IMG/VR virus record: IMGVR_UViG_3300044712_001462
Span: 124,001 to 188,000 of that record
Length of the DNA: 64,000 bases
Reading direction: 5' to 3' (one strand)
The notes under the pieces are model-generated. The model saw only the letters and a list, made by a program, of their open reading frames with translations, searched no databases and had not been told where the DNA came from. Position numbers and translations under genes: made by a program. Of the stretch, positions 2,128 through 40,272 are shown piece by piece. Position 1 is the first letter of the stretch; every line of letters begins with the position of its first letter.

Positions 2128-4115
2128 CTCTTTCGCAGTCTAACAACGGTTCAACTTGAAAGCGCACTCCCCGCGGCTCTCAGTCGCCGAATCATATCAC
2201 TCCGCAAATCTTCCCAAGCCTCATAGAGCTCAGATATGCCTGGCAGATCCTTAATCATCTCCATGGCCTCTTGCTCTACCTCCCACGTCCAATGCTCCTT
2301 AAAGGCGTCGAGGAACTTGCGAAAATCAACCTCTTTCCCCTCGATCGAGAACTCAATTCGGTAGTTCCCGTCCGGTGTTGGATCAGAAAAATCCCCAAGC
2401 GCCGCCATGATCGCACGCAGGAAGATTATTTTCTGGGTATGAGGTAACTGGGGATCATCAAACTTGATCACTTGCATTTCTTGATTTCCTTACTCAGCAG
2501 CTCACCCAAACGCCGGATTACCGAGTAGATGTTCGCCCGACCATCCCCGCTCTTCTCGTAATCCGCATCTGCAGAGAAGAACAGATTACGGCCAAAATGA
2601 CCGTTCCAATCTACCGTGTTGTAAAAGGCACCAGCTTTCTCCAAGGCATTAATCACCTTGGTTACAGACAGCCTATCCAAGGCCTCCCACTGCTCTTCGG
2701 TGAGAGGCACACAGACATCAAAGCGGGTAATCTCGTAATTCAGCTCCACCATTAATTGTTCTCCTCGTCAGGACTCTCAGCAGCCACCTCCAAGCCAATC
2801 TCACTTAGCGCTTTAGTGAGAGCGTCTTGAGATAGCTCGGAGCGCTGATCATTGTTCACGTTTACCGATCTTGGGAAACACCCCGCCTTTGAGAGCAGAA
2901 TGAATCAGGTTCAAAGTCTGACCTGGGCTGAACGTCTCAGACAATCTGTCATATAGCTCGTTGACCGAGGATACAACCCACTGAACGTCGTCTTCCATCT
3001 GGAGGGCTGGGGGCTTCGGCGCACCCGTCCCAGAGGCTGTAAGTATCTCCAGAGCCGAAAGAGCCTGTTGCATGAGATACGCGTCGTAGCCTGGTGAGCC
3101 ATGCAGCTGTCCAAGACGCGTTTTCAGAAGTTCAATAATCTCGAAGGGAGTCTTCTTTACAAAAGTATCTTCCGATTTACTGCCAGTAACTTCCACTGGT
3201 ACCTCCTTAGCGTTGTACGTCCGCTTGACTCGCTCCACCACTAGGAATTTGGTTCCACAGTGCGTGCACTGAGCCAGAAGCTCTGAGCCACATCGGGTGA
3301 CGGGTAGATGCGAGAGAACAAGCTGTCTTGAACACGCAGGACAAAACGGAACAGAAGTATTTTCGGCAAACAAGAACTCAGTACTCATACCGGATGTACC
3401 TTTGCTGAATTGGGGACAACGAAGCCATCGTGGTCAATATCCGCAGACAACAGAAAAGCCGCCTTTCTCCCGTCTGACTCCACCTGCTTCAAGGCTTGTT
3501 CCCTCGTGCCTCGCCAGAACTCGGCAATACCATCCGTAGTGATTACACGCCAGCGCTGGGTGACCGGAGGAACAAGTGCGTCATCTGACCATCTTCGGTC
3601 AACAAACGTCGTACCGTCTGTGTGGTAGGTGCTTATAAAACGATCATCTCCCGCAGCGCTTTCGACCACACCTATCAGAGTATGCTTCTCAGGCGCGCCT
3701 ATTGCCAACTCCGGAGGAAGTTCAGCCACGATCGTAACATCCCTATCAAAACCATCCTTATACCTACCCAAACCAAACTTATAGCCCACTGGTTTCTCCT
3801 CTTCTGTTTTGGACTCTGTGATAGCGCTATTTCGATTCAACAACTCATCCACCTCTATGAACCACCTGCGAGGTAGGTAAATATCCGCCTCCTGTTTCTC
3901 TCGCTCGTTTCGCTCGCCTTCGTAGGCGGAAGTCGCGTCCCAGGCTTCTACTAAGAGCTTGTGGTACCAGTTCAAAGCTCCCAGAATATCTAGAGCGTGC
4001 GCTTTGCCGTACCGAGCGTGAATCTCGCAAAGAGAGCTGCAGTAGTTCTGCGTCTCCATGGCTGTACACGAAGTATCCGTGTCATACTCTCCGCCGCACT
4101 GCTTACACGTTAATC

Positions 4116-17603: not shown

Positions 17604-18787
17604 GCAGCTTCAGCCGTCTCAGTCTCCTTGTCAGAGGGCTCCTCAGCCGGGACCGGGTCAGGTCGCAACACCTTTCTTCGGGTCGTCTCAGAAGACATAC
17701 CCATGATCGAGGTGAACAATTCATCCATGCGTCCCAATACGAACTCACGCTGCGTCCCATCTTTCCGCAAACGATTCGCTACCGTCGTAGCATCCTCGCC
17801 TACCCCTTTCAGAACGTTGTGGAGCTCTTCGAACTGGGCCCCAATCTGGCGACCATTCAAGATGCCAAACGGCTCAATCTTCGACTTGTACTCCTCAATC
17901 GCTTTGAAGACGCGCTCAATCACGCCATCCTTAAACGACTTTTGCGTACCATCCTGCCAGCCGCGGATCGAAGACACCATCTGCTGCAAACCCATCGCCA
18001 TCGCTTCTTCGATCAACTCCGCCTGCTTCTCAGCGACTTCGGTAAATTGCGCATTCAGTCGCGCCTGTTGTCGCCGGTATTCAGCCGGGTTCACCGCCTT
18101 CAAATACTCCGGCAACTCGAAGTTGTAGGTCTCAAAGCCCACGCCGATCTCCTGGTGGAGCCGTTCAGACGTCGGGTAATCCGACTCGTCATGCAACTCT
18201 CGGAGACGCTCCCGACACGTCGCCATGACTTCTGACCAGTTATTAGCCAGCTCATCAATAGCCTGCCGGAAGTCTGAGATCAGATCGTTGATCTCATCCA
18301 GGAACACACGCACTTCCTCATTCTGATCCTGTTCGGTCTCCCCGCGGACACCAAACAAGCGCACCCCATCTTCGGGGTACTTGAGGGTTTTCGATTGCCA
18401 GTACTTGATGAGCTTGGCCTTGGCCACCTGAACCGCGTGAATCGAAGGATGCTTCGCATACAACACTTTAGTAAAGCGGAGATGCGAGGGATCGCAGTCC
18501 ACGCTGCCAGCCAGCTTATGCGCTGCATCACCCTTAATCTTCCGGCTCTTACTCAGGTCATTGAACTTCAACCGGAAAGCTCGGGCGACTGCCTTAATGG
18601 TCTGCCCAGCTTCACGATAGCGCTCACGCTGTACCGCACGATCTTCTGCTGGAGGCAGATCCGCCAGCATCTTATCCACCTGCTCTTTGGTCAGGTGCTT
18701 CGTTGTCGTCTTCTTCTTTTTCTTCGACGACTTCTTCCCCACGTGCTGCTTAAGCTTCTGTAACAATTCAGGAGAGATACTTGCCAT
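17600..18787 (-). CDS. helical coiled-coil protein, DUF3150-like, partner of the AAA ATPase
   Basis: YWQSKTLKYPEDGVRLF...RERLRELHDESDYP motif; coupled to the ATPase through TAATG. Confidence 0.55.
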   Translation of the reverse strand: MASISPELLQKLKQHVGKKSSKKKKKTTTKHLTKEQVDKMLADLPPAEDRAVQRERYREAGQTIKAVARAFRLKFNDLSKSRKIKGDAAHKLAGSVDCDPSHLRFTKVLYAKHPSIHAVQVAKAKLIKYWQSKTLKYPEDGVRLFGVRGETEQDQNEEVRVFLDEINDLISDFRQAIDELANNWSEVMATCRERLRELHDESDYPTSERLHQEIGVGFETYNFELPEYLKAVNPAEYRRQQARLNAQFTEVAEKQAELIEEAMAMGLQQMVSSIRGWQDGTQKSFKDGVIERVFKAIEEYKSKIEPFGILNGRQIGAQFEELHNVLKGVGEDATTVANRLRKDGTQREFVLGRMDELFTSIMGMSSETTRRKVLRPDPVPAEEPSDKETETAEAA

Positions 18788-21700
18788 TAGTTAACATTGG
18801 GTCGAACTACCGACCGCCTCTTACCTCCGCCAGTGATGTCTGACACGCTGACCACTTGTTTCGCTCCTACATCGTAAAGCCCCGGAGCTGAGGCGTTCAA
18901 ACATCGTCCAGAGGCCCAGGCTCGCAGATCCTGCAGTTTGGTATCTGCCATTCGAGTGACAGGTACCACCTGCTTCGCAGCTTCGTCCAGAGAAACCTCA
19001 CGAATTGCCGCTAGGCGACAGCACGCCTTAATTTCAGCACCCGTCCAGCCCTCACTCAGCGTAAGGAGACTGTGCTTCACCTTGTCTGTCCGCGACTCCG
19101 CATGGCCATACAGATGCAAGTAGATCTGCCAAATAGCCAGGCGCTCTTCCTCTGTGGGAACATCCACAAAGAACACCGCATCAAAACGCTCCGCCCGAGA
19201 GAATTCTGGTGGGAGCATCGAGATGTTGTTGCAATTATGAACCACAACCCCAGACGCCATAAACGAGTGATGGGGCTCCTCAATAACCACATCGTAAACA
19301 GTCTGCTCACCAAGCGGAGAGGGTTCAACAGACACCACACTGACCCACTTCTGAGACCAAATACGTCGAACCTGCTCCAGCTCGTCTGCAATTTCGCGAG
19401 CCGCAGACTCGGACATCTTGGCAACATAGTGATCTACAATCACCTGCCACAACTCCGCCGTATCCGCCGATATTAGCGGAGTGTACTGCCTGTAGTTTGG
19501 CAACACCGATGTATAGCGACCAGCCGCTTTTAAAATAATCTCCAAACAATCATGCATTCCCGGAACACTCCGAACTCCATCTCCGTTAACCTCCTTAGGC
19601 CTACATATCCGACTTTTCTTGTCCGGGTGCTGAAACGGAATGAGCTGTGCAAACCGATGACAAGACTCCGAATCGCGGATACTCAGCTTAGTTACATCCT
19701 TGCGAGGAAGCTTTCGCGAAATCGTTGCAACAGAACCTTGAATATCAAATCTCGTTAAGAGAAGTCGAAGCTGGTCGATCATGACTGGGCTAGTTACCGC
19801 AATCTCAATTCGCCCACGTTTACTGATATAGCCCTCGGCGTCAAAAAGACCCGCTATAAAGGACAACACCACATCCTTGTCCGGAGATGCCATTACATCT
19901 TGAGGTATTTCTCGCACACATTGCAGGCATAAGATGTCTGGAAAATACTGCTCAAACCAATCTAACAGAAGACGACGATCCAGATAGATGTAGTACGACT
20001 GTGCTTTTGGACGCTTATCAATAACCTTTGGCTCTACTCCAAACAAACTACGAATCAGCGAGCATAGGTGCTGAGTCAGACCTGCGCTAAACTCAGATAA
20101 TTGAAGCCGATGGGCCTTCCTGTTTAAAAGCTTACCTTTACCCCCGTCCCCGCAGCAAAATCCAAGAAAATACGCCAATTCTGCTGTTAAGTACTCTGGT
20201 TGTTTAACAGGTTTCTGTCGGGATCGTGCTGGTAACGGCAGATACCGTTTTGCGGGTTTTGATCCCACTGGAGCTTTAGCTTTAGAAAGCAATAGATCAT
20301 CAGCAGTAAGATGCTTCGCTTCTTTCTCAGCTATTTTACCGTTTTGAAAGACAAAGAATCTGTGATCAGGCGTTGCATCGATGAACCCAGCTGACGTACG
20401 TATGCGTAGCATGTCGCGAATACCGCGGCTGTACACTAGCCCGGAGCCAGATACCCACTGACCAGTCTCGTCATCCACACTCAGGAACGTTTCACGTTGG
20501 CCTACAAGCGACTCAAGTTTACAGATACGCCCGTCCGCCAACTCAACAAGTGTTCCACCGGCCAAACACGTACCGATGAAAAACACATCTGACGTATGGT
20601 CGTTCAACCAACTGAGTAACTTACCAAAAATGCGATCACCAGAGCCGCCATCTGTCATCGATGATGACTGACCTGCTCCGGACAGTGCTTTCTCGATTTC
20701 CACTTGTGTTACGAGATACCCGTTTCCGGTACCTCTCTTACGGTTACCCGTAAGGTCAGACTATTTCATCCTGTCGCTGCGACAGGGCCCCCGTTTCGAG
20801 ATCACTTGATCTCTACTTCCTTTCGGAATAGTCGTTGAACGTTTCAGTCATAGACTGACTTCGCTGCAGATAATCCAGGCTAGTGGACTTCCCTGCAATT
20901 AGAGGGCTTTGCATCGGCATGTCACCACGCCGAGGGACTAACGTTAATCCACAAAGAGAATGCACGGCTGCATAGCATCAGCCAGCTTCAGAGCCATCCG
21001 GACATTGGCATCCGTTTCACCCTGAAACTTCGATCTGAGTGCGCCCATATCCATCATGAGCACTTTGCGCTGGGTCTCATTACCCATCGCCTTAATGATC
21101 GCACTCTTACCGGCACCAGGCACACCAAGGAGCAGCATACCACGAGGCTGAAGCAGAGGATTATCTCGTCGCCGAAGTAGCTGCTTCGAGAACTCCTTGA
21201 ATTGCTGCAACCCACCCAACTGCGCATAAGTGTCTGTGCCTTTGTAGATCTCCAGTACACCGCGCTTCTTGAGATCCTGAGCCTTCAGGTCCCAGATCTC
21301 ATTGGGATCGAGCTTACCGGTCTTCGCCAGAGACAAACTCAGAGCATCCTCGAAACCACGTCGAGACAATCCCGCCGCAGCATCTAAGACCAGTCGTTTG
21401 TCGTCATCCGTTTTAGGTAACTCCGTCTCCGCACAGATGTTCTTAGCGATCGACCAGAGTTGTTCCTTACCTGGCAGCTCGTGCTCCAGGATTACAAAGT
21501 CCTTCTCTAGCTCTCGAGGGATCTCAATCATCGGAGAGAGCACAATGGCGCAGCAGGAGACCTGGCCCTCCGCCTTACAATCCGTTACCGCGTTCTGCAG
21601 AGCCTGCATGATGGGTAGGTTGTGAACCAGCTGCTGGTGATGGAAATTCTTGAGAATCCAGATGACGTGAGTAGCACCCTCGCTACCCTGGGACTCTTGA

Positions 21701-21981
21701 GCCTGCCGAAGGGCCAGAGACATCACAGGCATGTCCTGAACCAACGGGAGAGGCTTCATCTGGTAGTTAGTATTCTTCGAAATGAAATCTCTTAGCGTCT
21801 CAGCTGTATCTCGGGGGCATTTGAGGCCCGCGGCGAAGTCCCACACAATGACCGGCCATTGTCTCTCAGCACATACCGGTACGATCTCTGCGATAGCATC
21901 CCCAAACTCATAAGTCTCAACCCAAAGGCCGGTGAAACCGGCTCGCAAATACTGCCGTACTTGCTCCCCAAGTGCTGGCAC
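18787..21981 (-). CDS. Ycf46-like AAA+ ATPase, join(21981-20947, 20700-18787); ~537 aa after intron and intein removal
   Basis: Walker A GVPGAGKS; Walker B ILFVD|EIEK restored by splicing; sensor-1 FIGT|CNNI restored by intein excision; arginine-finger region PPEFSRAERFD. Confidence 0.9.
19234..20568 (-). mobile_element. intein (445 aa) with LAGLIDADG homing endonuclease
   Basis: N-terminal CLAGGT, block B ATPDHRFF, LAGLIDADG motifs LAYFLGFCCGDG and FIAGLFDAEG, block F TVYDV, C-terminal VVHN followed by +1 Cys. Confidence 0.93.
20701..20946 (-). ncRNA. group I self-splicing intron (246 nt, no ORF)
   Basis: The 5' exon ends in U, paired U.G in P1 (GGAU/GUCC). Core elements P AATTGCAGGGAA, Q ATCTGCAGC, R GTTCAACGACTA, S GAAATAGTCT; terminal G. 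Removal fuses GAT|GAA in frame. Confidence 0.93.
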
Positions 21982-22190
21982 TAATTCGTCTCCTGTTGGT
22001 AGTCTGTCCCCAACTCCGGATTGTAGAACTCAGGTAGGAGCTCTGGTTCACCCAGAGGGACTCCCATCTTGTTGGCGAAGTTCTGCGCAATCTTCAGACA
22101 CCCCTCACCCTGGTGTCCTTCCACAGTCATCTTAAAGCGCCCATCGGGCCCGCTGGTAAACACTAGCTTTGTCATCGAATCAGCTCCCAT
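21981..22190 (-). CDS. DUF2997-like small protein
   Basis: PDG.....VEGHQGEGC............ELLPEFY motif; directly upstream of the AAA ATPase. Confidence 0.7.
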   Translation of the reverse strand: MGADSMTKLVFTSGPDGRFKMTVEGHQGEGCLKIAQNFANKMGVPLGEPELLPEFYNPELGTDYQQETN

Positions 22191-37215: not shown

Positions 37216-38220
37216 CTAACAGATAGCATTCAACCAAGCTTCCACATGATCTTCTGGCCTGTGTTTATCCGCAGCCCCAGGCCTTACAGCAGGTAAGGGT
37301 CCGCGCATAGCTGCACTAAGCTCAGCCACACTACCCAAGGACGTTACTATCAGTCCGGGTGTGTCTGGTGCTTCCAGAGCCGCGCTACCTACATCCGAGA
37401 CAATTACCGGACGTCTACGAGCCAAGGCTTCGGCAATGGTTAAGTCATACCCCTGTCCATAAGCTGTCGGTACCACTAAGGCGTCCACTCCGTCATACAC
37501 AGCAGGCATATCCCGACGTTTGACATTCGAGATTGTGGATAACCTCACGCCAGCCAACTGTGCTGCTTCGGCTGCTGTCTCAAATAACCGAGTTCCCTGT
37601 CCCGAAATAGAAGCGCACAGAAAAGTATCCTGACGCTTAACAGGAGCCGTCGGAGAACGGAAAAAGTACCCAGGAATCGGGTTGTAAACCAACTTAGCCT
37701 GGGGAAGACACATGTAGTGCCTGAGCATCTGATACTCGTGACGACTGATCCCTAGCACCGTATCAAAAGTAGCTAGAGCCTTACGTTCCCGAAGCATACC
37801 AGGCGCATCAAACCGGGGCTCCTCGCTCGTCTTACCTAGCCAGTACAGATTCCACTGGGTCAGAAACGATCCCCAGCCAAAACCGTGTAACGTACAGGCG
37901 GTTGTCGTATTCGGTAAGTCAGCCCACCAGGTCCTGTGTACATCTAGGGAGTCGCAATGCACGACGTCAGGCCTGATTCGCTCACAGAATGCGCGGCATC
38001 CTTCTGCAAACTCTGTCGAATAGACATGCGGCTCACAGTCAAGATGGTGAACAACCAGGTTAGTTACCTGTGTTACTGCCTGTAATGTTGGATGTCCGGT
38101 AGTTAAAACAAATACCGTATGTCCGGCGGCAGCCAGCGCTTCCGCTCTGTCCTGAACCACAAACGGCATCCCACCACTACGATGTGTAGGATATACCCGA
38201 CAGACAAGTATGATCTTCAT
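37216..38220 (-). CDS. glycosyltransferase family 4 (GT-B)
   Basis: MKIILV..YP...GG...LAAAGHTV.VLT; C-terminal VVPT..QGYDLTIAEALA..RPVIVSDVG. Confidence 0.85.
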   Translation of the reverse strand: MKIILVCRVYPTHRSGGMPFVVQDRAEALAAAGHTVFVLTTGHPTLQAVTQVTNLVVHHLDCEPHVYSTEFAEGCRAFCERIRPDVVHCDSLDVHRTWWADLPNTTTACTLHGFGWGSFLTQWNLYWLGKTSEEPRFDAPGMLRERKALATFDTVLGISRHEYQMLRHYMCLPQAKLVYNPIPGYFFRSPTAPVKRQDTFLCASISGQGTRLFETAAEAAQLAGVRLSTISNVKRRDMPAVYDGVDALVVPTAYGQGYDLTIAEALARRRPVIVSDVGSAALEAPDTPGLIVTSLGSVAELSAAMRGPLPAVRPGAADKHRPEDHVEAWLNAIC

Positions 38221-38720: not shown

Positions 38721-39325
38721 TCCAGCACCTTCTCTACGGGTACTAACAGTGTTCGAATCCGTTCCACGAGATCTCGAACAGGTTTTGGATCAGTCTCCCA
38801 GGGCACATGCAGAGTAAGGACTAGCGGGTACCCAAAGGTCGCCGGGATCCTCTCTACTAACTCGGAAGCTCGTCCATATAGCTCTTTACAGGCAGGCATG
38901 TAGACCGCTGCGCCAACCCGAGAAGGTAGGCAACTAGACGAGATATTTCCCTCATAACCTCCCAAGAAGATTGAGCCACCAGCTTCTGACCAGTTAAGGA
39001 CTGTCTGTCGCGTATAGGCGTTGAATGGTGGAATGTACACCCCTGTCTGAAGCTTTAACCTAGACTCGCGCATTCTGTCCGCCGAGACATCTGCTCCCCG
39101 AGTATGGTCGTAGCCATGAACCGACCACCGCTCTGGTTCCTGCAGATCGACACGCGCCGCAGCTCCCGGCTCCAACCAAGCCGGTACTGCGCCGTAAATG
39201 GCTGGTGTGCCTATCAGACCACAAGCACCCCTCCACCAGTCAAAATAACGCAGAGCGCCATCCGATCCCTGTTCCGGCTTGTCTCCCTCTCGTCTCCCTA
39301 CGTCATCAATCCGTAAGACAATCAT
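38711..39325 (-). CDS. NodB/polysaccharide deacetylase-like protein
   Basis: LRIDDVG, SVHGYDH, YIPPFNAY, LTLH. Confidence 0.7.
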   Translation of the reverse strand: MIVLRIDDVGRREGDKPEQGSDGALRYFDWWRGACGLIGTPAIYGAVPAWLEPGAAARVDLQEPERWSVHGYDHTRGADVSADRMRESRLKLQTGVYIPPFNAYTRQTVLNWSEAGGSIFLGGYEGNISSSCLPSRVGAAVYMPACKELYGRASELVERIPATFGYPLVLTLHVPWETDPKPVRDLVERIRTLLVPVEKVLEWL

Positions 39326-40272
39326 GCTGCCTCCACAAGCGCCCTAAACGATTCCTTCTTCTGCTCCCACGAACGCTGCTCAGCCCACTGTCGCGCAGCC
39401 AGACTAGCTTCTGAAATATCCTTCCCCAGCCACTTCTGACACAACAGCAACAGGTGGTGCGCATCCGGTAGGTACCAATCTACCGATCGGCCTATCTTTT
39501 TGGTCACCGCACGCGAGTTGATCCTGTCTAGAGCTGGGTATTCGTTCCACGGATTACCGTTCGTGGAGATGACAGGCATTCCACTGGCTGCCGCCTCGAG
39601 GATCTCTAAGCCAATACCGTCCACTGAGTGGGGCACAAGAAGAACATCCCCCTCTGTGTACAGCTCTGCGTTGGACTCAGGACTCGAAGTAGACGCCCAG
39701 TCCAGTTTCTTCTGGCTATAAACTGCAATAGGTATATCCGGCCAGTTATGCCTCAGCCGCTGCACGAGCCCGCCGCCTTTTCTCCCCAAGTACCCACCGT
39801 GCCCGTTGATAAACACAAAACGGCGACAAACAGTTCTCTGTCTGAATACAAACCTAGTCAGATCTACCGGCCAGGGAAAAAAGACACAGGGCAGCCGATC
39901 CTTAAACTGGTTGAAACAGTGTTCAGTCGGACACAGATAACGAGATACACCCCACTGTCGGGCGCTGTCTGGCAACCACTCCTGCATAGGAATGCAGATA
40001 GCAGGGCGACTGTACTCACGGCAGAGCGCAGGCAGAGTAGCAAAATAAGGGTGTTCGCAGAAAACAACCCTATCTACCTTGTCTCGCACGAAAGAGAGTC
40101 CAGCCTGCTCGTCACCGTATGTTGAGTACTCCGCGCGATCAGGAGTTGTGGTGGGAAAATCTCGATGTTTCACCACCAGCCAATGGGCTAAATCAACGTG
40201 GGAATCAATCTGGCGATTGAGTTCACCCAATCCCGAAGCGCAGCAATACCCCGCTAATCCAATACGCGACAT
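39322..40272 (-). CDS. glycosyltransferase (GT-B, GT4-like)
   Basis: PWPVDLTRF, GRKGG, DVLLVPHSVDGIGLEILEAAASGMPVISTN. Confidence 0.85.
   Translation of the reverse strand: MSRIGLAGYCCASGLGELNRQIDSHVDLAHWLVVKHRDFPTTTPDRAEYSTYGDEQAGLSFVRDKVDRVVFCEHPYFATLPALCREYSRPAICIPMQEWLPDSARQWGVSRYLCPTEHCFNQFKDRLPCVFFPWPVDLTRFVFRQRTVCRRFVFINGHGGYLGRKGGGLVQRLRHNWPDIPIAVYSQKKLDWASTSSPESNAELYTEGDVLLVPHSVDGIGLEILEAAASGMPVISTNGNPWNEYPALDRINSRAVTKKIGRSVDWYLPDAHHLLLLCQKWLGKDISEASLAARQWAEQRSWEQKKESFRALVEAA

What the first reader, a model, noticed from the sequence alone, without database searches (positions are those of the whole stretch)
18787..21981. One AAA+ ATPase gene carries both a group I intron and an intein, 44 codons apart
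Seen: the two ORF-track entries are one gene. A 246-nt group I intron with P/Q/R/S elements, a U.G 5' splice pair and terminal G sits exactly between the Walker B Asp and Glu codons and begins with an in-frame TAA. A 445-aa LAGLIDADG intein sits at sensor-1 (GT|CNN). Known: phage introns and inteins mostly target nucleotide-metabolism, replication and packaging genes. Inference: this Ycf46-type ATPase is conserved and important enough to be a homing target. The ORF-less intron may spread by co-conversion with the intein endonuclease 132 nt away (collaborative homing), and active protein needs two sequential splicing steps.
Basis: partly seen in the sequence, partly recalled or inferred. Interest (0 to 1): 0.8.

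Follow-up and report, generated by a model that had tools for sequence, protein, structure and literature searches.

The report
Phage ATPase gene with intron and intein
One gene of a 224-kb soil phage, encoding a Ycf46-like AAA+ ATPase, is interrupted by a self-splicing group I intron and, 44 codons later, by a protein-splicing intein; both belong to mobile-element families that recur at these two sites in other phages, mostly separately, so the case is real and tidy but of a known kind.

Summary
The gene lies on the minus strand.
- Exon 1 is 21981-20947 and ends ...ILFVD.
- A 246-nt ORF-less group I intron is 20946-20701 (Rfam RF00028, 71 bits against a cutoff of 50).
- Exon 2 is 20700-18787. 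It contains a 445-aa LAGLIDADG intein at 20568-19234 (Cys1 ... His-Asn, then Cys+1).

Uninterrupted homologues (60-70% identical) read straight through both junctions.

The co-homing interpretation is not supported as the origin of the intron. About ten other phage contigs, and one metagenome contig with no DNA held, carry a homologous intron at the same Asp|Glu site. Almost all of these introns carry their own HNH endonuclease gene in the P8 loop, and none of these genes has the intein. At least five other protein clusters carry a homologous intein at the same Thr|Cys site without the intron.

A ~97%-identical sibling phage in an activated-sludge metagenome has the same intron with a P8 insert of at least 620 nt. 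The insert ends in the HNH C-terminal signature. This sibling precisely lacks the intein.

One residue of the idea survives. The only two genes with both elements (this window and locus L140) both have introns that lost the endonuclease gene. That fits trans-homing by the intein endonuclease, but the count is not significant (p about 0.14), and locus L198 is a counter-example.

No RNA evidence of splicing was obtainable.

The parts
20947..21981 (-). Exon 1: 345 codons with a GTG start at 21981-21979. It encodes the N-terminal domain, Walker A (GVPGAGKS, residues 286-293) and Walker B up to Asp345 (ILFVD).
   Evidence: ORF list. Pfam AAA 49.4 bits, profile positions 1-64 of 131. PHROG 8638, E 3e-35. 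Collinear with P0002-P0004 from residue 1. Coordinates verified.
20701..20946 (-). ORF-less group I intron of 246 nt. It has the extra helices P7.1 and P7.2 (subgroup IA-like). It begins with an in-frame TAA and ends with G at 20701.
   Evidence: Rfam RF00028, 71 bits. Single-sequence fold z = -5.3 recovers P2-P9.1. 33 base pairs show compensatory changes among 7 homologous introns. The same boundaries are seen in L082, L095, L136, L140 and L198.
20935..20950 (-). P1 helix. Exon GGAU (20950-20947) plus intron UAA (20946-20944) pairs with the internal guide UUAGUCC (20941-20935). The splice-site U at 20947 pairs with G.
   Evidence: Rfam alignment and sequence check. Intron positions 1-3 covary with the guide: UAA/UUA here, UGA/UCA in L095, AGA/UCU in L136.
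20770..20787 (-). P8 hairpin CCCUGUCG-CAG-CGACAGG with a minimal loop. In relatives this position holds an HNH endonuclease ORF of 557-599 nt.
   Evidence: In run X2 the match to the window breaks at 20774/20782 and continues into at least 620 nt of other sequence.
20759..20833 (-). P7 (GACUA 20833-20829 pairing with UAGUC 20763-20759). It encloses P7.1 (20828-20817), P7.2 (20813-20798), the 3' strand of P3, and P8.
   Evidence: R and S elements in the Rfam alignment. P7 is invariant, while P7.1 and P7.2 covary. Coordinates.
20569..20700 (-). First part of exon 2: 44 codons, Glu346 to Thr389 (EIEKALSG...FFIGT). This includes the Walker B Glu and is the N-extein flank of the intein.
   Evidence: Translation. 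Identical register in P0002-P0004.
19234..20568 (-). Intein of 445 aa, class 1 with a LAGLIDADG endonuclease domain. Block A is CLAGGTL. Block B TPDH is at 20373-20362. LAGLIDADG motif 1 (LAYFLGFCCGDGG) is at 20178-20140 and motif 2 (FIAGLFDAEG) is at 19860-19831. The terminal His-Asn is at 19239-19234.
   Evidence: Pfam Intein_splicing 50.2 bits and LAGLIDADG_3 53 bits. NCBIfam intein_Nterm 28.7 bits. Alignment A2 with six homologous inteins at the same site keeps C1, T66, the GDGG motif, D243/A244, H444 and N445 invariant. It matches archaeal V-ATPase inteins and PI-PfuI in the PDB. It is precisely absent from the X2 allele.
18787..19233 (-). C-extein: Cys390 (TGC 19233-19231) to Asn537, then the stop TAA at 18789-18787. 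It contains the sensor-1 Asn (CNN), the Arg-finger region (RAERFD) and the AAA lid.
   Evidence: PHROG 8638 positions 409-550. AAA_lid_3.
21981..22190 (-). Upstream neighbour: a 69-aa DUF2997 protein. Its end overlaps the ATPase start. The pairing is conserved in relatives.
   Evidence: Pfam DUF2997 26 bits. The same neighbour appears in the contigs of P0002, P0003, P0125 and P0241.

Best explanation
This is a phage gene for a classical-clade, Ycf46-like AAA+ ATPase. The mature protein is 537 aa. Two unrelated selfish elements invaded the gene independently, each at a catalytic motif.

Expression (inferred from the sequence and from established knowledge of these element types):
1. The transcript must self-splice. 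The 246-nt group I ribozyme excises itself and joins GUGGAU to GAAAUC. Without splicing, translation stops at the TAA that opens the intron.
2. The spliced mRNA yields a 982-aa precursor.
3. The 445-aa intein then excises itself, using Cys1, block B Thr/His, His-Asn and Cys+1. This joins Thr389 to Cys390 and releases a free LAGLIDADG endonuclease.

History (inferred from comparison with relatives):
- The intron belongs to a family that homes to the Walker B Asp|Glu codons of phage AAA genes using its own HNH endonuclease, encoded in the P8 loop.
- The window's copy has lost that gene.
- The intron was present before the intein arrived. The intein came later through its own LAGLIDADG-driven homing to the Thr|Cys site.

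The intron may now hitch-hike on intein homing, but that is not needed to explain it.
For: Gene structure:
- Rfam 71 bits.
- Both junctions are exact against uninterrupted homologues.
- All intein splicing residues and both LAGLIDADG motifs are conserved.
- The ribozyme helices are supported by 33 compensatory pairs and a fold z-score of -5.3.

The intron family has its own endonuclease gene:
- L082, L095, L097, L129, L132, L134 and L138 (809-814 nt) and L136/L137 (855 nt) carry a homologous intron at the same site.
- Each has an HNH ORF of about 186 aa in P8.
- The P0241 locus has a 179-aa ORF between its two exons.

Loss of the endonuclease gene:
- L140 keeps only the last ~30 codons of that ORF.
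- In X2, which is ~97% identical in the exons, the intron arms are identical to the window's. P8 holds an insert of at least 620 nt whose 3' end translates to ...RCMACYGQRYRMK*. The HNH ORF of L095 ends ...LCNRCNVRRYKMT*.

Independence of the two elements:
- X2 joins 19234 to 20578 with 8 substituted letters. That is a precise 445-codon absence of the intein.
- P0125, P0126, P0127, P0129 and P0132 carry a homologous intein at the same site with Walker B uninterrupted.
- Among 184 homologue loci sampled through exon-1 patterns, 3 have the intron and 0 have the intein.

Order of events:
- X2 and the window show no differences across 20696-21036 (intron arms plus 90 nt of exon 1).
- They differ at about 3% in the rest of exon 1.
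- They differ at about 7-11% in the ~90 nt of N-extein next to the intein site.
Against: - There is no RNA or protein evidence of either splicing step. The two 'RNA' runs were flagged as probably DNA and matched only the conserved core of unrelated introns.
- The X2 evidence comes from short Logan contigs, which may derive from more than one strain. Only 30 letters of each end of the P8 insert could be read.
- The direction of change, loss of the endonuclease gene here or gain in X2, is inferred by parsimony only. The 7-nt P8 loop of the window is not a clean deletion junction of the X2 insert.
- The function of the ATPase is unknown.
Confidence: 0.75

Rival explanations
1. The ORF-less intron is now maintained and spread by the intein's LAGLIDADG endonuclease. 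Cleavage of an empty Thr|Cys site in a co-infecting phage starts repair from this genome, and the repair co-converts the intron 132 bp away. The intron's own HNH gene therefore became dispensable and decayed.
For: - The 132-bp distance is far inside the co-conversion range of up to 2 kb reported for T4 homing. Wilson and Edgell showed a defunct intron mobilised by a neighbouring endonuclease and predicted the same for endonuclease-lacking introns or inteins sharing a gene (PMC2790892).
- Both genes that carry intron plus intein (the window, and L140/L141) have introns without a functional endonuclease gene. All four lineages with an endonuclease-bearing intron lack the intein.
- The endonuclease motifs of the intein are intact.
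Against: - The association is 2/0 against 1/4 lineages, Fisher p about 0.14. L198 has an ORF-less intron of the same family with no intein.
- The two elements mostly occur apart.
- The intron arms are identical to those of the intein-less sibling X2, while the N-extein next to the intein is unusually diverged. This suggests that the tract converted with the intein stopped short of the intron.
- Neighbouring homing elements can hinder rather than help each other (PMC10643990).
- No cleavage or homing data exist.
Confidence: 0.2
2. The ORF-less intron is the older state in this lineage. The X2 sibling recently gained an HNH gene in P8, when a free-standing endonuclease invaded the intron. On this reading nothing was lost in the window.
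For: - The window's P8 loop (CGCAGCG) is not a simple deletion junction of the X2 insert ends.
- ORF-less copies exist in three lineages that are not each other's closest relatives.
- Invasion of introns by endonuclease genes is an accepted route (PMC3984707).
Against: - HNH ORFs with the same C-terminal Cys-x-x-Cys ... Arg/Lys-rich tail overlap the 3' strand of P8 and J8/7 in L095, L136, the L140 remnant and X2.
- Intron cores are only 57-70% identical between lineages. One old acquisition followed by repeated loss therefore needs fewer events than repeated gains at the same spot.
Confidence: 0.15
3. The gene is decaying or is expressed as two separate polypeptides. On this reading the intron or intein no longer splices and the ATPase is not made intact.
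For: - No expression data are available.
- A GTG at 20703 could open exon 2 as an independent ORF.
Against: - Both exons and the intein are open over 982 codons.
- Every ribozyme core helix and every intein splicing residue is conserved.
- The same allele occurs at 100% identity in a second rhizosphere run, X3.
- Separate halves would place the Walker B Asp and Glu on different chains.
Confidence: 0.04

Closest known systems
nrdE (bnrdE) of Bacillus subtilis phage SPbeta
   Same: [quoted passage not shown]
   Different: - The host gene there is a ribonucleotide reductase, not an AAA+ ATPase.
- Here the two elements are 132 nt apart, at Walker B and sensor 1.
- Here the intron is an endonuclease-less member of an HNH-carrying family.
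Phage T4 nrdB intron with defunct I-TevIII, mobilised in trans by MobE (Wilson and Edgell 2009, PMC2790892)
   Same: An intron without a working endonuclease lies within co-conversion distance of another active homing endonuclease's target. This is the model for how the window's intron could hitch-hike.
   Different: - The helper there is a free-standing HNH nickase and the effect was shown experimentally.
- Here the candidate helper is an intein-borne LAGLIDADG enzyme and nothing has been tested.
Collaborative homing (cyanophage psbA intron with F-CphI; reviewed in PMC3984707)
   Same: [quoted passage not shown]
   Different: There the endonuclease cuts at the intron insertion site itself.
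Phage subgroup IA group I introns with HNH endonuclease ORFs (T4 td/nrdB type; introns of Vibrio phage JA-1 and Enterococcus phage EF1)
   Same: - The core shows 85-89% identity over about 55-65 nt to the JA-1 and EF1 introns. HNH genes are annotated beside those matches.
- P7.1 and P7.2 are present, and there is an early in-frame stop.
   Different: - The insertion site is the Walker B of an AAA+ ATPase.
- This copy has no ORF.
Homologous inteins in other phage Ycf46-like AAA ATPases (P0125, P0126, P0127, P0129, P0132, P0138; ESM Atlas cluster of ~1000-aa AAA + Intein_splicing + LAGLIDADG_3 proteins, 147 members)
   Same: They share the insertion point (...GT/AT|C...HN|CN...) and the same intein blocks, and are 26-40% identical to the window's intein.
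   Different: All but P0138 (locus L140) lack the intron. The window's intein has no relative above 44% identity over the extein-plus-intein stretch.

Membership tests
Group I intron (Rfam RF00028) | Covariance-model score above the curated gathering threshold | tested here: met
   71 bits against a threshold of 50, E 4e-17, full model 1-253.
Group I intron (Rfam RF00028) | P1 helix formed by the 5' exon and an internal guide, with a U.G pair at the 5' splice site | tested here: met
   GGAU|UAA pairs with UUAGUCC. Intron positions 1-3 covary with the guide in L095 and L136.
Group I intron (Rfam RF00028) | Conserved core P3-P9 with a P7 guanosine-binding helix, and a terminal G at the 3' splice site | tested here: met
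   All helices are kept in 7 homologous introns. 33 pairs show double changes and P7 is invariant. The terminal G is conserved in window, L095, L136, L140 and L198.
Group I intron (Rfam RF00028) | Self-splicing (GTP-dependent) and a ligated exon junction in RNA | not testable with these tools
   No usable RNA run was found. X6 and X7 were flagged as probably DNA and matched only other introns' cores.
Subgroup IA group I introns | Extra helices P7.1 and P7.2 between P7 and the 3' strand of P3 | tested here: met
   Two hairpins at 20828-20817 and 20813-20798 are recovered by the fold and covary. The assignment within subgroup IA rests on my knowledge of the Michel-Westhof scheme. It was not tested formally.
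Intein (class 1) | Splicing residues: Cys/Ser1, block B Thr-x-x-His, C-terminal His-Asn, and a nucleophile at +1 | tested here: met
   C1, TPDH, HN and Cys+1 are present and invariant in alignment A2. Pfam Intein_splicing scores 50.2 against a cutoff of 35.8.
Intein (class 1) | In-frame insertion that is precisely absent from homologues, which are continuous across the site | tested here: met
   P0002-P0004 read FF[VI]GT-CNN. A contig in X2 skips exactly 445 codons.
Intein (class 1) | Protein splicing activity | not testable with these tools
   This needs expression of the precursor.
LAGLIDADG homing endonuclease | Two LAGLIDADG motifs, each ending in a catalytic acidic residue | tested here: met
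   LAYFLGFCCGDGG and FIAGLFDAEG are present. G140-D141-G142-G143 and D243-A244 are invariant in A2. LAGLIDADG_3 scores 53 bits.
LAGLIDADG homing endonuclease | Site-specific cleavage of the empty allele | not testable with these tools
   Candidate empty sites are available from L002, L005 and X2.
Classical AAA+ ATPase (Pfam PF00004) | Walker A, Walker B hhhhDE, sensor-1 Asn, Arg fingers and lid, in one module | tested here: met
   This holds after conceptual splicing: GVPGAGKS 286, ILFVDE 341, GTCNN 388, RAERFD 402. The uninterrupted homologue P0002 scores PF00004 92.7 bits and matches Cdc48/p97 D2 at E 1e-42.
Ycf46 (plastid/cyanobacterial AAA protein) | Orthology to Ycf46, meaning the same N-terminal domain plus one AAA module and grouping with bona fide Ycf46 | tested here: inconclusive
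   Only automatic names support it: JGI 'SpoVK/Ycf46/Vps4 family', and ESM Atlas clusters named ycf46 at score 0.99. No curated model matched above its cutoff. No tree was built.
Collaborative homing | [quoted passage not shown] | not testable with these tools
   The cut site is unknown. By analogy with other inteins it would be at the Thr|Cys site 132 bp away, which would not meet the definition (PMC3984707, PMC2790892).
Trans homing | A non-autonomous intron lies within co-conversion distance of an active endonuclease's target and is co-inherited with it | tested here: inconclusive
   The distance criterion is met at 132 bp. The distribution across lineages is suggestive but not significant, and L198 is a counter-example. 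Co-inheritance was not tested.

The most novel reading that the evidence does not exclude
The intein endonuclease has taken over the mobility of the neighbouring intron. Once a LAGLIDADG intein sits 132 bp from the intron, the intron's own HNH gene becomes redundant or even interferes, and it decays. This would have happened twice independently, in this window and in L140. The result would be a composite selfish unit that homes as one piece and is removed at two levels, RNA and protein.
Probability: 0.2. Interest if true: 0.6.

Novelty: new member of a known kind. Interest (0 to 1): 0.45.

Why it matters
A gene that needs both RNA splicing and protein splicing is already known from SPbeta nrdE. 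What this case adds is the context.

- **A new hot spot.** I found no description of this family of phage Ycf46-like AAA+ ATPases as a homing target in the searched literature. It turns out to carry three kinds of self-splicing element, each at a conserved motif: a group I intron at Walker B Asp|Glu, a LAGLIDADG intein just before the sensor-1 Asn, and a group II intron at ..WL|ND.. in some relatives.
- **A natural allelic series.** Natural alleles exist in most combinations: empty; intron with its endonuclease gene; intron without it; intein only; intron without it plus intein. These include two near-identical sibling phages that differ in both characters.
- **A test system.** This series would let one test whether neighbouring homing elements help each other (trans homing) or hinder each other. 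The series marks the ATPase as conserved enough in these phages to be a safe harbour for such elements.

Tried and rejected
1. **RNA evidence for splicing.** Two run searches and one read-laying found no transcript of this phage. The two 'RNA' wastewater runs were flagged as probably DNA, and their very deep signal at 20790-20847 comes from the conserved core of unrelated introns.
2. **Word-based search with the intein alone**. It found only distant archaeal inteins and wrongly suggested the intein was an orphan. The exhaustive phmmer search corrected this.
3. **Profile search with alignment A3**. It was swamped by intein-less ATPases and added nothing.
4. **IMG/VR scan with the intein alignment**. 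The 51 other hits are LAGLIDADG elements in unrelated genes. None is in an AAA homologue.
5. **IMG/VR scan for the X2 insert end**. No match, so the sibling's endonuclease gene could not be recovered.
6. **Scan for the P7-P7.1-P7.2-P3' core pattern**. The 76 further phage contigs carry this core in genes that are not AAA homologues, so the core pattern is generic for this intron type. L135 and L139 look like chance matches, and L131 carries a similar P1 in another gene.
7. **Megablast of the whole locus against GenBank phages**. It matched only ~60 nt of intron core. The phage has no sequenced close relative in that collection.
9. **A perfect link between 'no endonuclease gene in the intron' and 'intein present'.** I considered this and dropped it after finding L198.

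Full report
**Where the window comes from**

The window is part of IMGVR_UViG_3300044712_001462, a 224,528-bp viral contig. The run that holds it completely is a rhizosphere metagenome. Nearly all genes lie on the minus strand and GC is about 0.52. No close relative exists among GenBank phages. Only about 60 nt of the intron core match other phage introns.

**Checking the observation**

The two ORFs at 20944-21981 and 18787-20703, both on the minus strand, are pieces of one gene.

The intron:
- Rfam's group I intron model matches 20956-20737 on the minus strand at 71 bits (gathering score 50, E 4e-17). It is the only such hit in the 64-kb window.
- Read on the gene strand, exon 1 ends ...CTC TTT GTG GAT. 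The next codon is TAA, and the sequence ...CAAGTG is followed by GAA ATC GAG.
- The intron is therefore 20946-20701, 246 nt, ending in G.
- P1 is formed by exon GGAU plus intron UAA pairing with UUAGUCC. The splice-site U is opposite G.

The intein:
- In exon 2, 44 codons (EIEKALSG...FFIGT) precede an in-frame insert of 445 codons that reads CLAGGTL...VVVHN, followed by CNN.
- Pfam finds Intein_splicing (50.2 bits) and LAGLIDADG_3 (53 bits).

Uninterrupted homologues P0002, P0003 and P0004 are 528, 526 and 526 aa and 60-70% identical in exon 1. They read ...ILAIDEIEKALSG... and ...FFVGTCNNISMLPPEF.... Both junctions are therefore exact to the codon.

**The ribozyme**

- The single sequence folds into P2, P3, P4/P5, P6, two hairpins between P7 and the 3' strand of P3 (P7.1 and P7.2), P8, P9 and P9.1. 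The energy z-score is -5.3.
- I aligned seven homologous introns from three lineages, with their P8 inserts removed.
- 33 base pairs show changes on both sides that keep the pair. By helix these are 7 of 8 in P2, 5 of 7 in P9.1, 4 of 6 in P9 and 3 each in P7.1 and P7.2. P7 is invariant.
- P1 also covaries: UAA/UUA here, UGA/UCA in L095, AGA/UCU in L136.
- P7.1 and P7.2 are the mark of subgroup IA, the usual type in phages. That classification rests on my own knowledge and was not tested formally.

**The intein**

- Alignment with six homologous inteins inserted at the same point (A2) keeps the following invariant: Cys1, the block B Thr, the GDGG of the first LAGLIDADG motif, the DA of the second, and the terminal His-Asn.
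- The +1 residue is Cys.
- The closest solved structures are archaeal V-ATPase inteins and PI-PfuI.
- Nothing in the sequence suggests a decayed splicing domain or endonuclease domain.

**The host protein**

- After conceptual splicing, the 537-aa product has Walker A at 286, ILFVDE at 341, GTCNN at 388 and RAERFD at 402.
- The homologue P0002 matches PF00004 at 92.7 bits and the D2 ring of Cdc48/p97 at E 1e-42. The roughly 260-aa N-terminal domain has no named family.
- 'Ycf46' is what automatic pipelines call the relatives. I did not test orthology.
- A small DUF2997 gene is a conserved upstream neighbour.
- The closest cellular or prophage homologues are in Planctomycetota MAGs at 35-45% identity.

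**Survey of relatives**

I collected 184 homologue loci using peptide patterns in exon 1, so the sample does not depend on what interrupts the gene. They comprise 80 metagenome, 41 viral and 63 bacterial-genome loci. I laid the mature protein on each.

- Three loci (L082, L095, L097) have an insertion of about 800 nt exactly at Asp|Glu.
- One locus (L063) has a 2.4-kb insertion at ..SWL|NDH..
- None has the intein.
- Rfam calls the three a group I intron (68-73 bits) and the fourth a group II intron (68.8 bits) with a reverse-transcriptase ORF.

Pattern scans added more copies at the same site: L129, L130, L132, L134 and L138, plus L136/L137 in a more distant AAA gene (L136 at 55 bits). All of these introns are 809-855 nt. 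Each carries an ORF of about 186 aa in the P8 loop that matches Pfam HNH. The end of that ORF overlaps the 3' strand of P8 and J8/7.

**Inteins in relatives**

- A first, word-based search made the intein look like an orphan. This was an artefact.
- The exhaustive phmmer search found full-length proteins of 896-1045 aa in which N-extein, intein and C-extein align in a single stretch.
- P0125, P0126, P0127, P0129 and P0132 have the intein at the same ...T|C...HN|CN... point with Walker B DE uninterrupted.
- An ESM Atlas cluster of ~1000-aa phage AAA proteins carrying Intein_splicing and LAGLIDADG_3 has 147 members.

**Both elements together, and ORF-less introns**

- P0138 starts just after the intron site. 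Its contigs L140/L141 (from a 193-kb contig) show exon 1 ending ...ILFVD, then a 374-nt group I intron (88.8 bits), then exon 2 with the intein.
- That intron keeps only the last ~30 codons of the HNH ORF, reading ...GLCVNCYAKSRRKHKI*.
- L198 has a 261-nt ORF-less intron of the same family and no intein.
- The P0241 locus has a 179-aa ORF between its two exons and no intein.

| State | Lineages |
|---|---|
| Intron with endonuclease gene, no intein | 4 |
| Intron without it, no intein | 1 |
| Intron without it, plus intein | 2 |
| Intron with it, plus intein | 0 |

Fisher's exact p is about 0.14. Intron cores are 57-70% identical between lineages. The three ORF-less copies are not each other's nearest relatives.

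**The sibling phage**

Laying Logan contigs of four runs on 18700-22050 gave the most direct evidence.

- Run X3, another rhizosphere sample, holds the same allele at 100% identity, including intein and intron pieces.
- Run X2, from activated sludge, holds a relative about 97% identical.
- One X2 contig joins 19234 to 20578 with 8 other letters between them. That removes exactly 445 codons and leaves FFVGT|CNN, a precise intein-less allele.
- Two other X2 contigs match the intron arms (20696-20774 and 20782-20946) without a single difference. At the P8 loop they continue into 331 and 290 letters that are unlike the window.
- The 30 readable letters at the 3' end of that insert, read with the following intron bases, translate to ...RCMACYGQRYRMK*. 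The HNH ORF of L095 ends ...LCNRCNVRRYKMT*.
- No X2 contig covers the intein or the short P8 loop.

The pattern of differences is also informative.
- There are none across 20696-21036.
- The rest of exon 1 differs at about 3%.
- The ~90 nt of N-extein next to the intein site differ at about 7-11%.

I read this as follows. The intron is shared by descent with the intein-less sibling. The intein arrived later, together with a short stretch of donor flank that did not reach the intron.

Caveats: these are short assembled contigs, possibly from more than one strain, and contigs can show presence but not absence.

**What it is and how it works**

Shown here:
- the anatomy of the gene;
- the family membership of both elements;
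- their recurrence at the same two sites;
- their largely independent distribution.

Inferred:
- The transcript self-splices, and otherwise translation ends at the TAA that opens the intron.
- The 982-aa precursor undergoes protein splicing to give a 537-aa ATPase and a free LAGLIDADG endonuclease.
- The intron entered by HNH-driven homing and later lost that gene.
- The intein entered separately.

- 'Collaborative homing' is also the wrong term. It means an endonuclease that cuts at the intron insertion site (PMC3984707).
- The relevant precedent is trans homing of the T4 nrdB intron by MobE. Its authors explicitly extend the idea to endonuclease-lacking introns or inteins sharing a gene, within about 2 kb (PMC2790892).
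- At 132 bp the geometry fits. Both double-element genes have endonuclease-less introns. So a present-day hitch-hiking role stays open at about 0.2.
- Against it stand L198, the sibling data, and the report that neighbouring inteins can interfere with each other's homing (PMC10643990).

**Comparison with what is known, and novelty**

- Inteins favour ATPase motifs (PMC5050341; PMC4760082 was listed but not read).
- In the held literature I found no description of introns or inteins in this phage AAA family.
- I therefore rate this as a new member of a known kind. The added value is a three-element hot spot and a natural series of alleles.

**Limits**

- There is no RNA or protein evidence of splicing.
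- The full sequence of the X2 insert was not recovered.
- Lineage counts are small.
- No phylogeny of the elements was built.

Noticed in passing
L063:1221-3612 (also protein P0028): A group II intron (Rfam RF00029, 68.8 bits at 3512-3612) with a 528-aa reverse-transcriptase/maturase ORF interrupts a homologous AAA gene at ..SWL|NDH... This is a third insertion site, lying between the group I and intein sites. P0028 ends with the same read-through tail (..TWLVRRRTA).
   Followed up: partly
L140:2472-5830 (same in L141): This is a second phage (193-kb contig) whose AAA gene has both a group I intron at Asp|Glu (3612-3985, 374 nt) and a homologous LAGLIDADG intein. The intron keeps only the C-terminal ~30 codons of the HNH ORF. 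A ClpB-like two-ring AAA gene and a metallophosphatase gene lie upstream.
   Followed up: partly
L142:1014-5455 (MAG GCA_038247765.1): An AAA homologue is truncated just before the intein site. It is followed by a 484-aa ORF (P0137) that has a zinc-finger-like N-terminus fused to the endonuclease part of this intein family, without the N-terminal splicing block. A reverse-transcriptase ORF lies upstream. It may be a decayed or free-standing derivative.
   Followed up: no
window:20790-20847: In two wastewater runs labelled RNA-Seq (X6, X7) this 50-60 nt of intron core has word depth of about 90-900, while the flanks have almost none. The contigs run on into unrelated sequence. These are therefore abundant unrelated group I introns, not this phage.
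   Followed up: partly
window:23726-24952 (-): This 408-aa ORF is a tyrosine recombinase/integrase (PHROG 1, E 3e-30; Pfam Phage_integrase, 56 bits). It sits 1.7 kb upstream of the ATPase, in a 224-kb phage contig.
   Followed up: no
window:41470-42750 (+): This is an Mre11/SbcD-like DNA repair exonuclease (PHROG 704, E 5e-56). It is one of very few sizeable genes on the plus strand in a window otherwise transcribed leftward.
   Followed up: no
window:14910-15887, 37216-38220, 39322-40272 (-): These ORFs match a nucleotide-sugar epimerase and two glycosyltransferase-like proteins (PHROG 540 and PHROG 2170). An epimerase and a 2H-SAK gene also lie downstream of the ATPase in the contig of P0002, so part of the neighbourhood is syntenic.
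   Followed up: no
window:1983-2054 (-): This is a tRNA-Thr (anticodon UGU), the only tRNA in the window.
   Followed up: no
L275-L289 (genome contigs): The nearest homologues in bacterial genomes are almost all in Planctomycetota MAGs (Pirellulaceae, Gemmataceae, Rhodopirellula) at 35-45% identity. None is interrupted by an intron or intein. Three show frameshifts. This is a weak hint at the phage's host range.
   Followed up: partly
L131:2770-2800 (reverse strand): The same exon-plus-guide motif (GTGGAT|TAACTTCAGTCCC) occurs in a viral contig with no AAA homologue nearby. It may be a related intron in a different gene.
   Followed up: no
window:20569-20660 compared with run X2: The ~90 nt of N-extein beside the intein site differ from the intein-less sibling far more (about 7-11%, including 4 of the 9 nt next to the site) than the rest of the gene (2-3%). 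The intron and the adjacent 90 nt of exon 1 show no difference at all. The pattern looks like two separate conversion tracts.
   Followed up: partly
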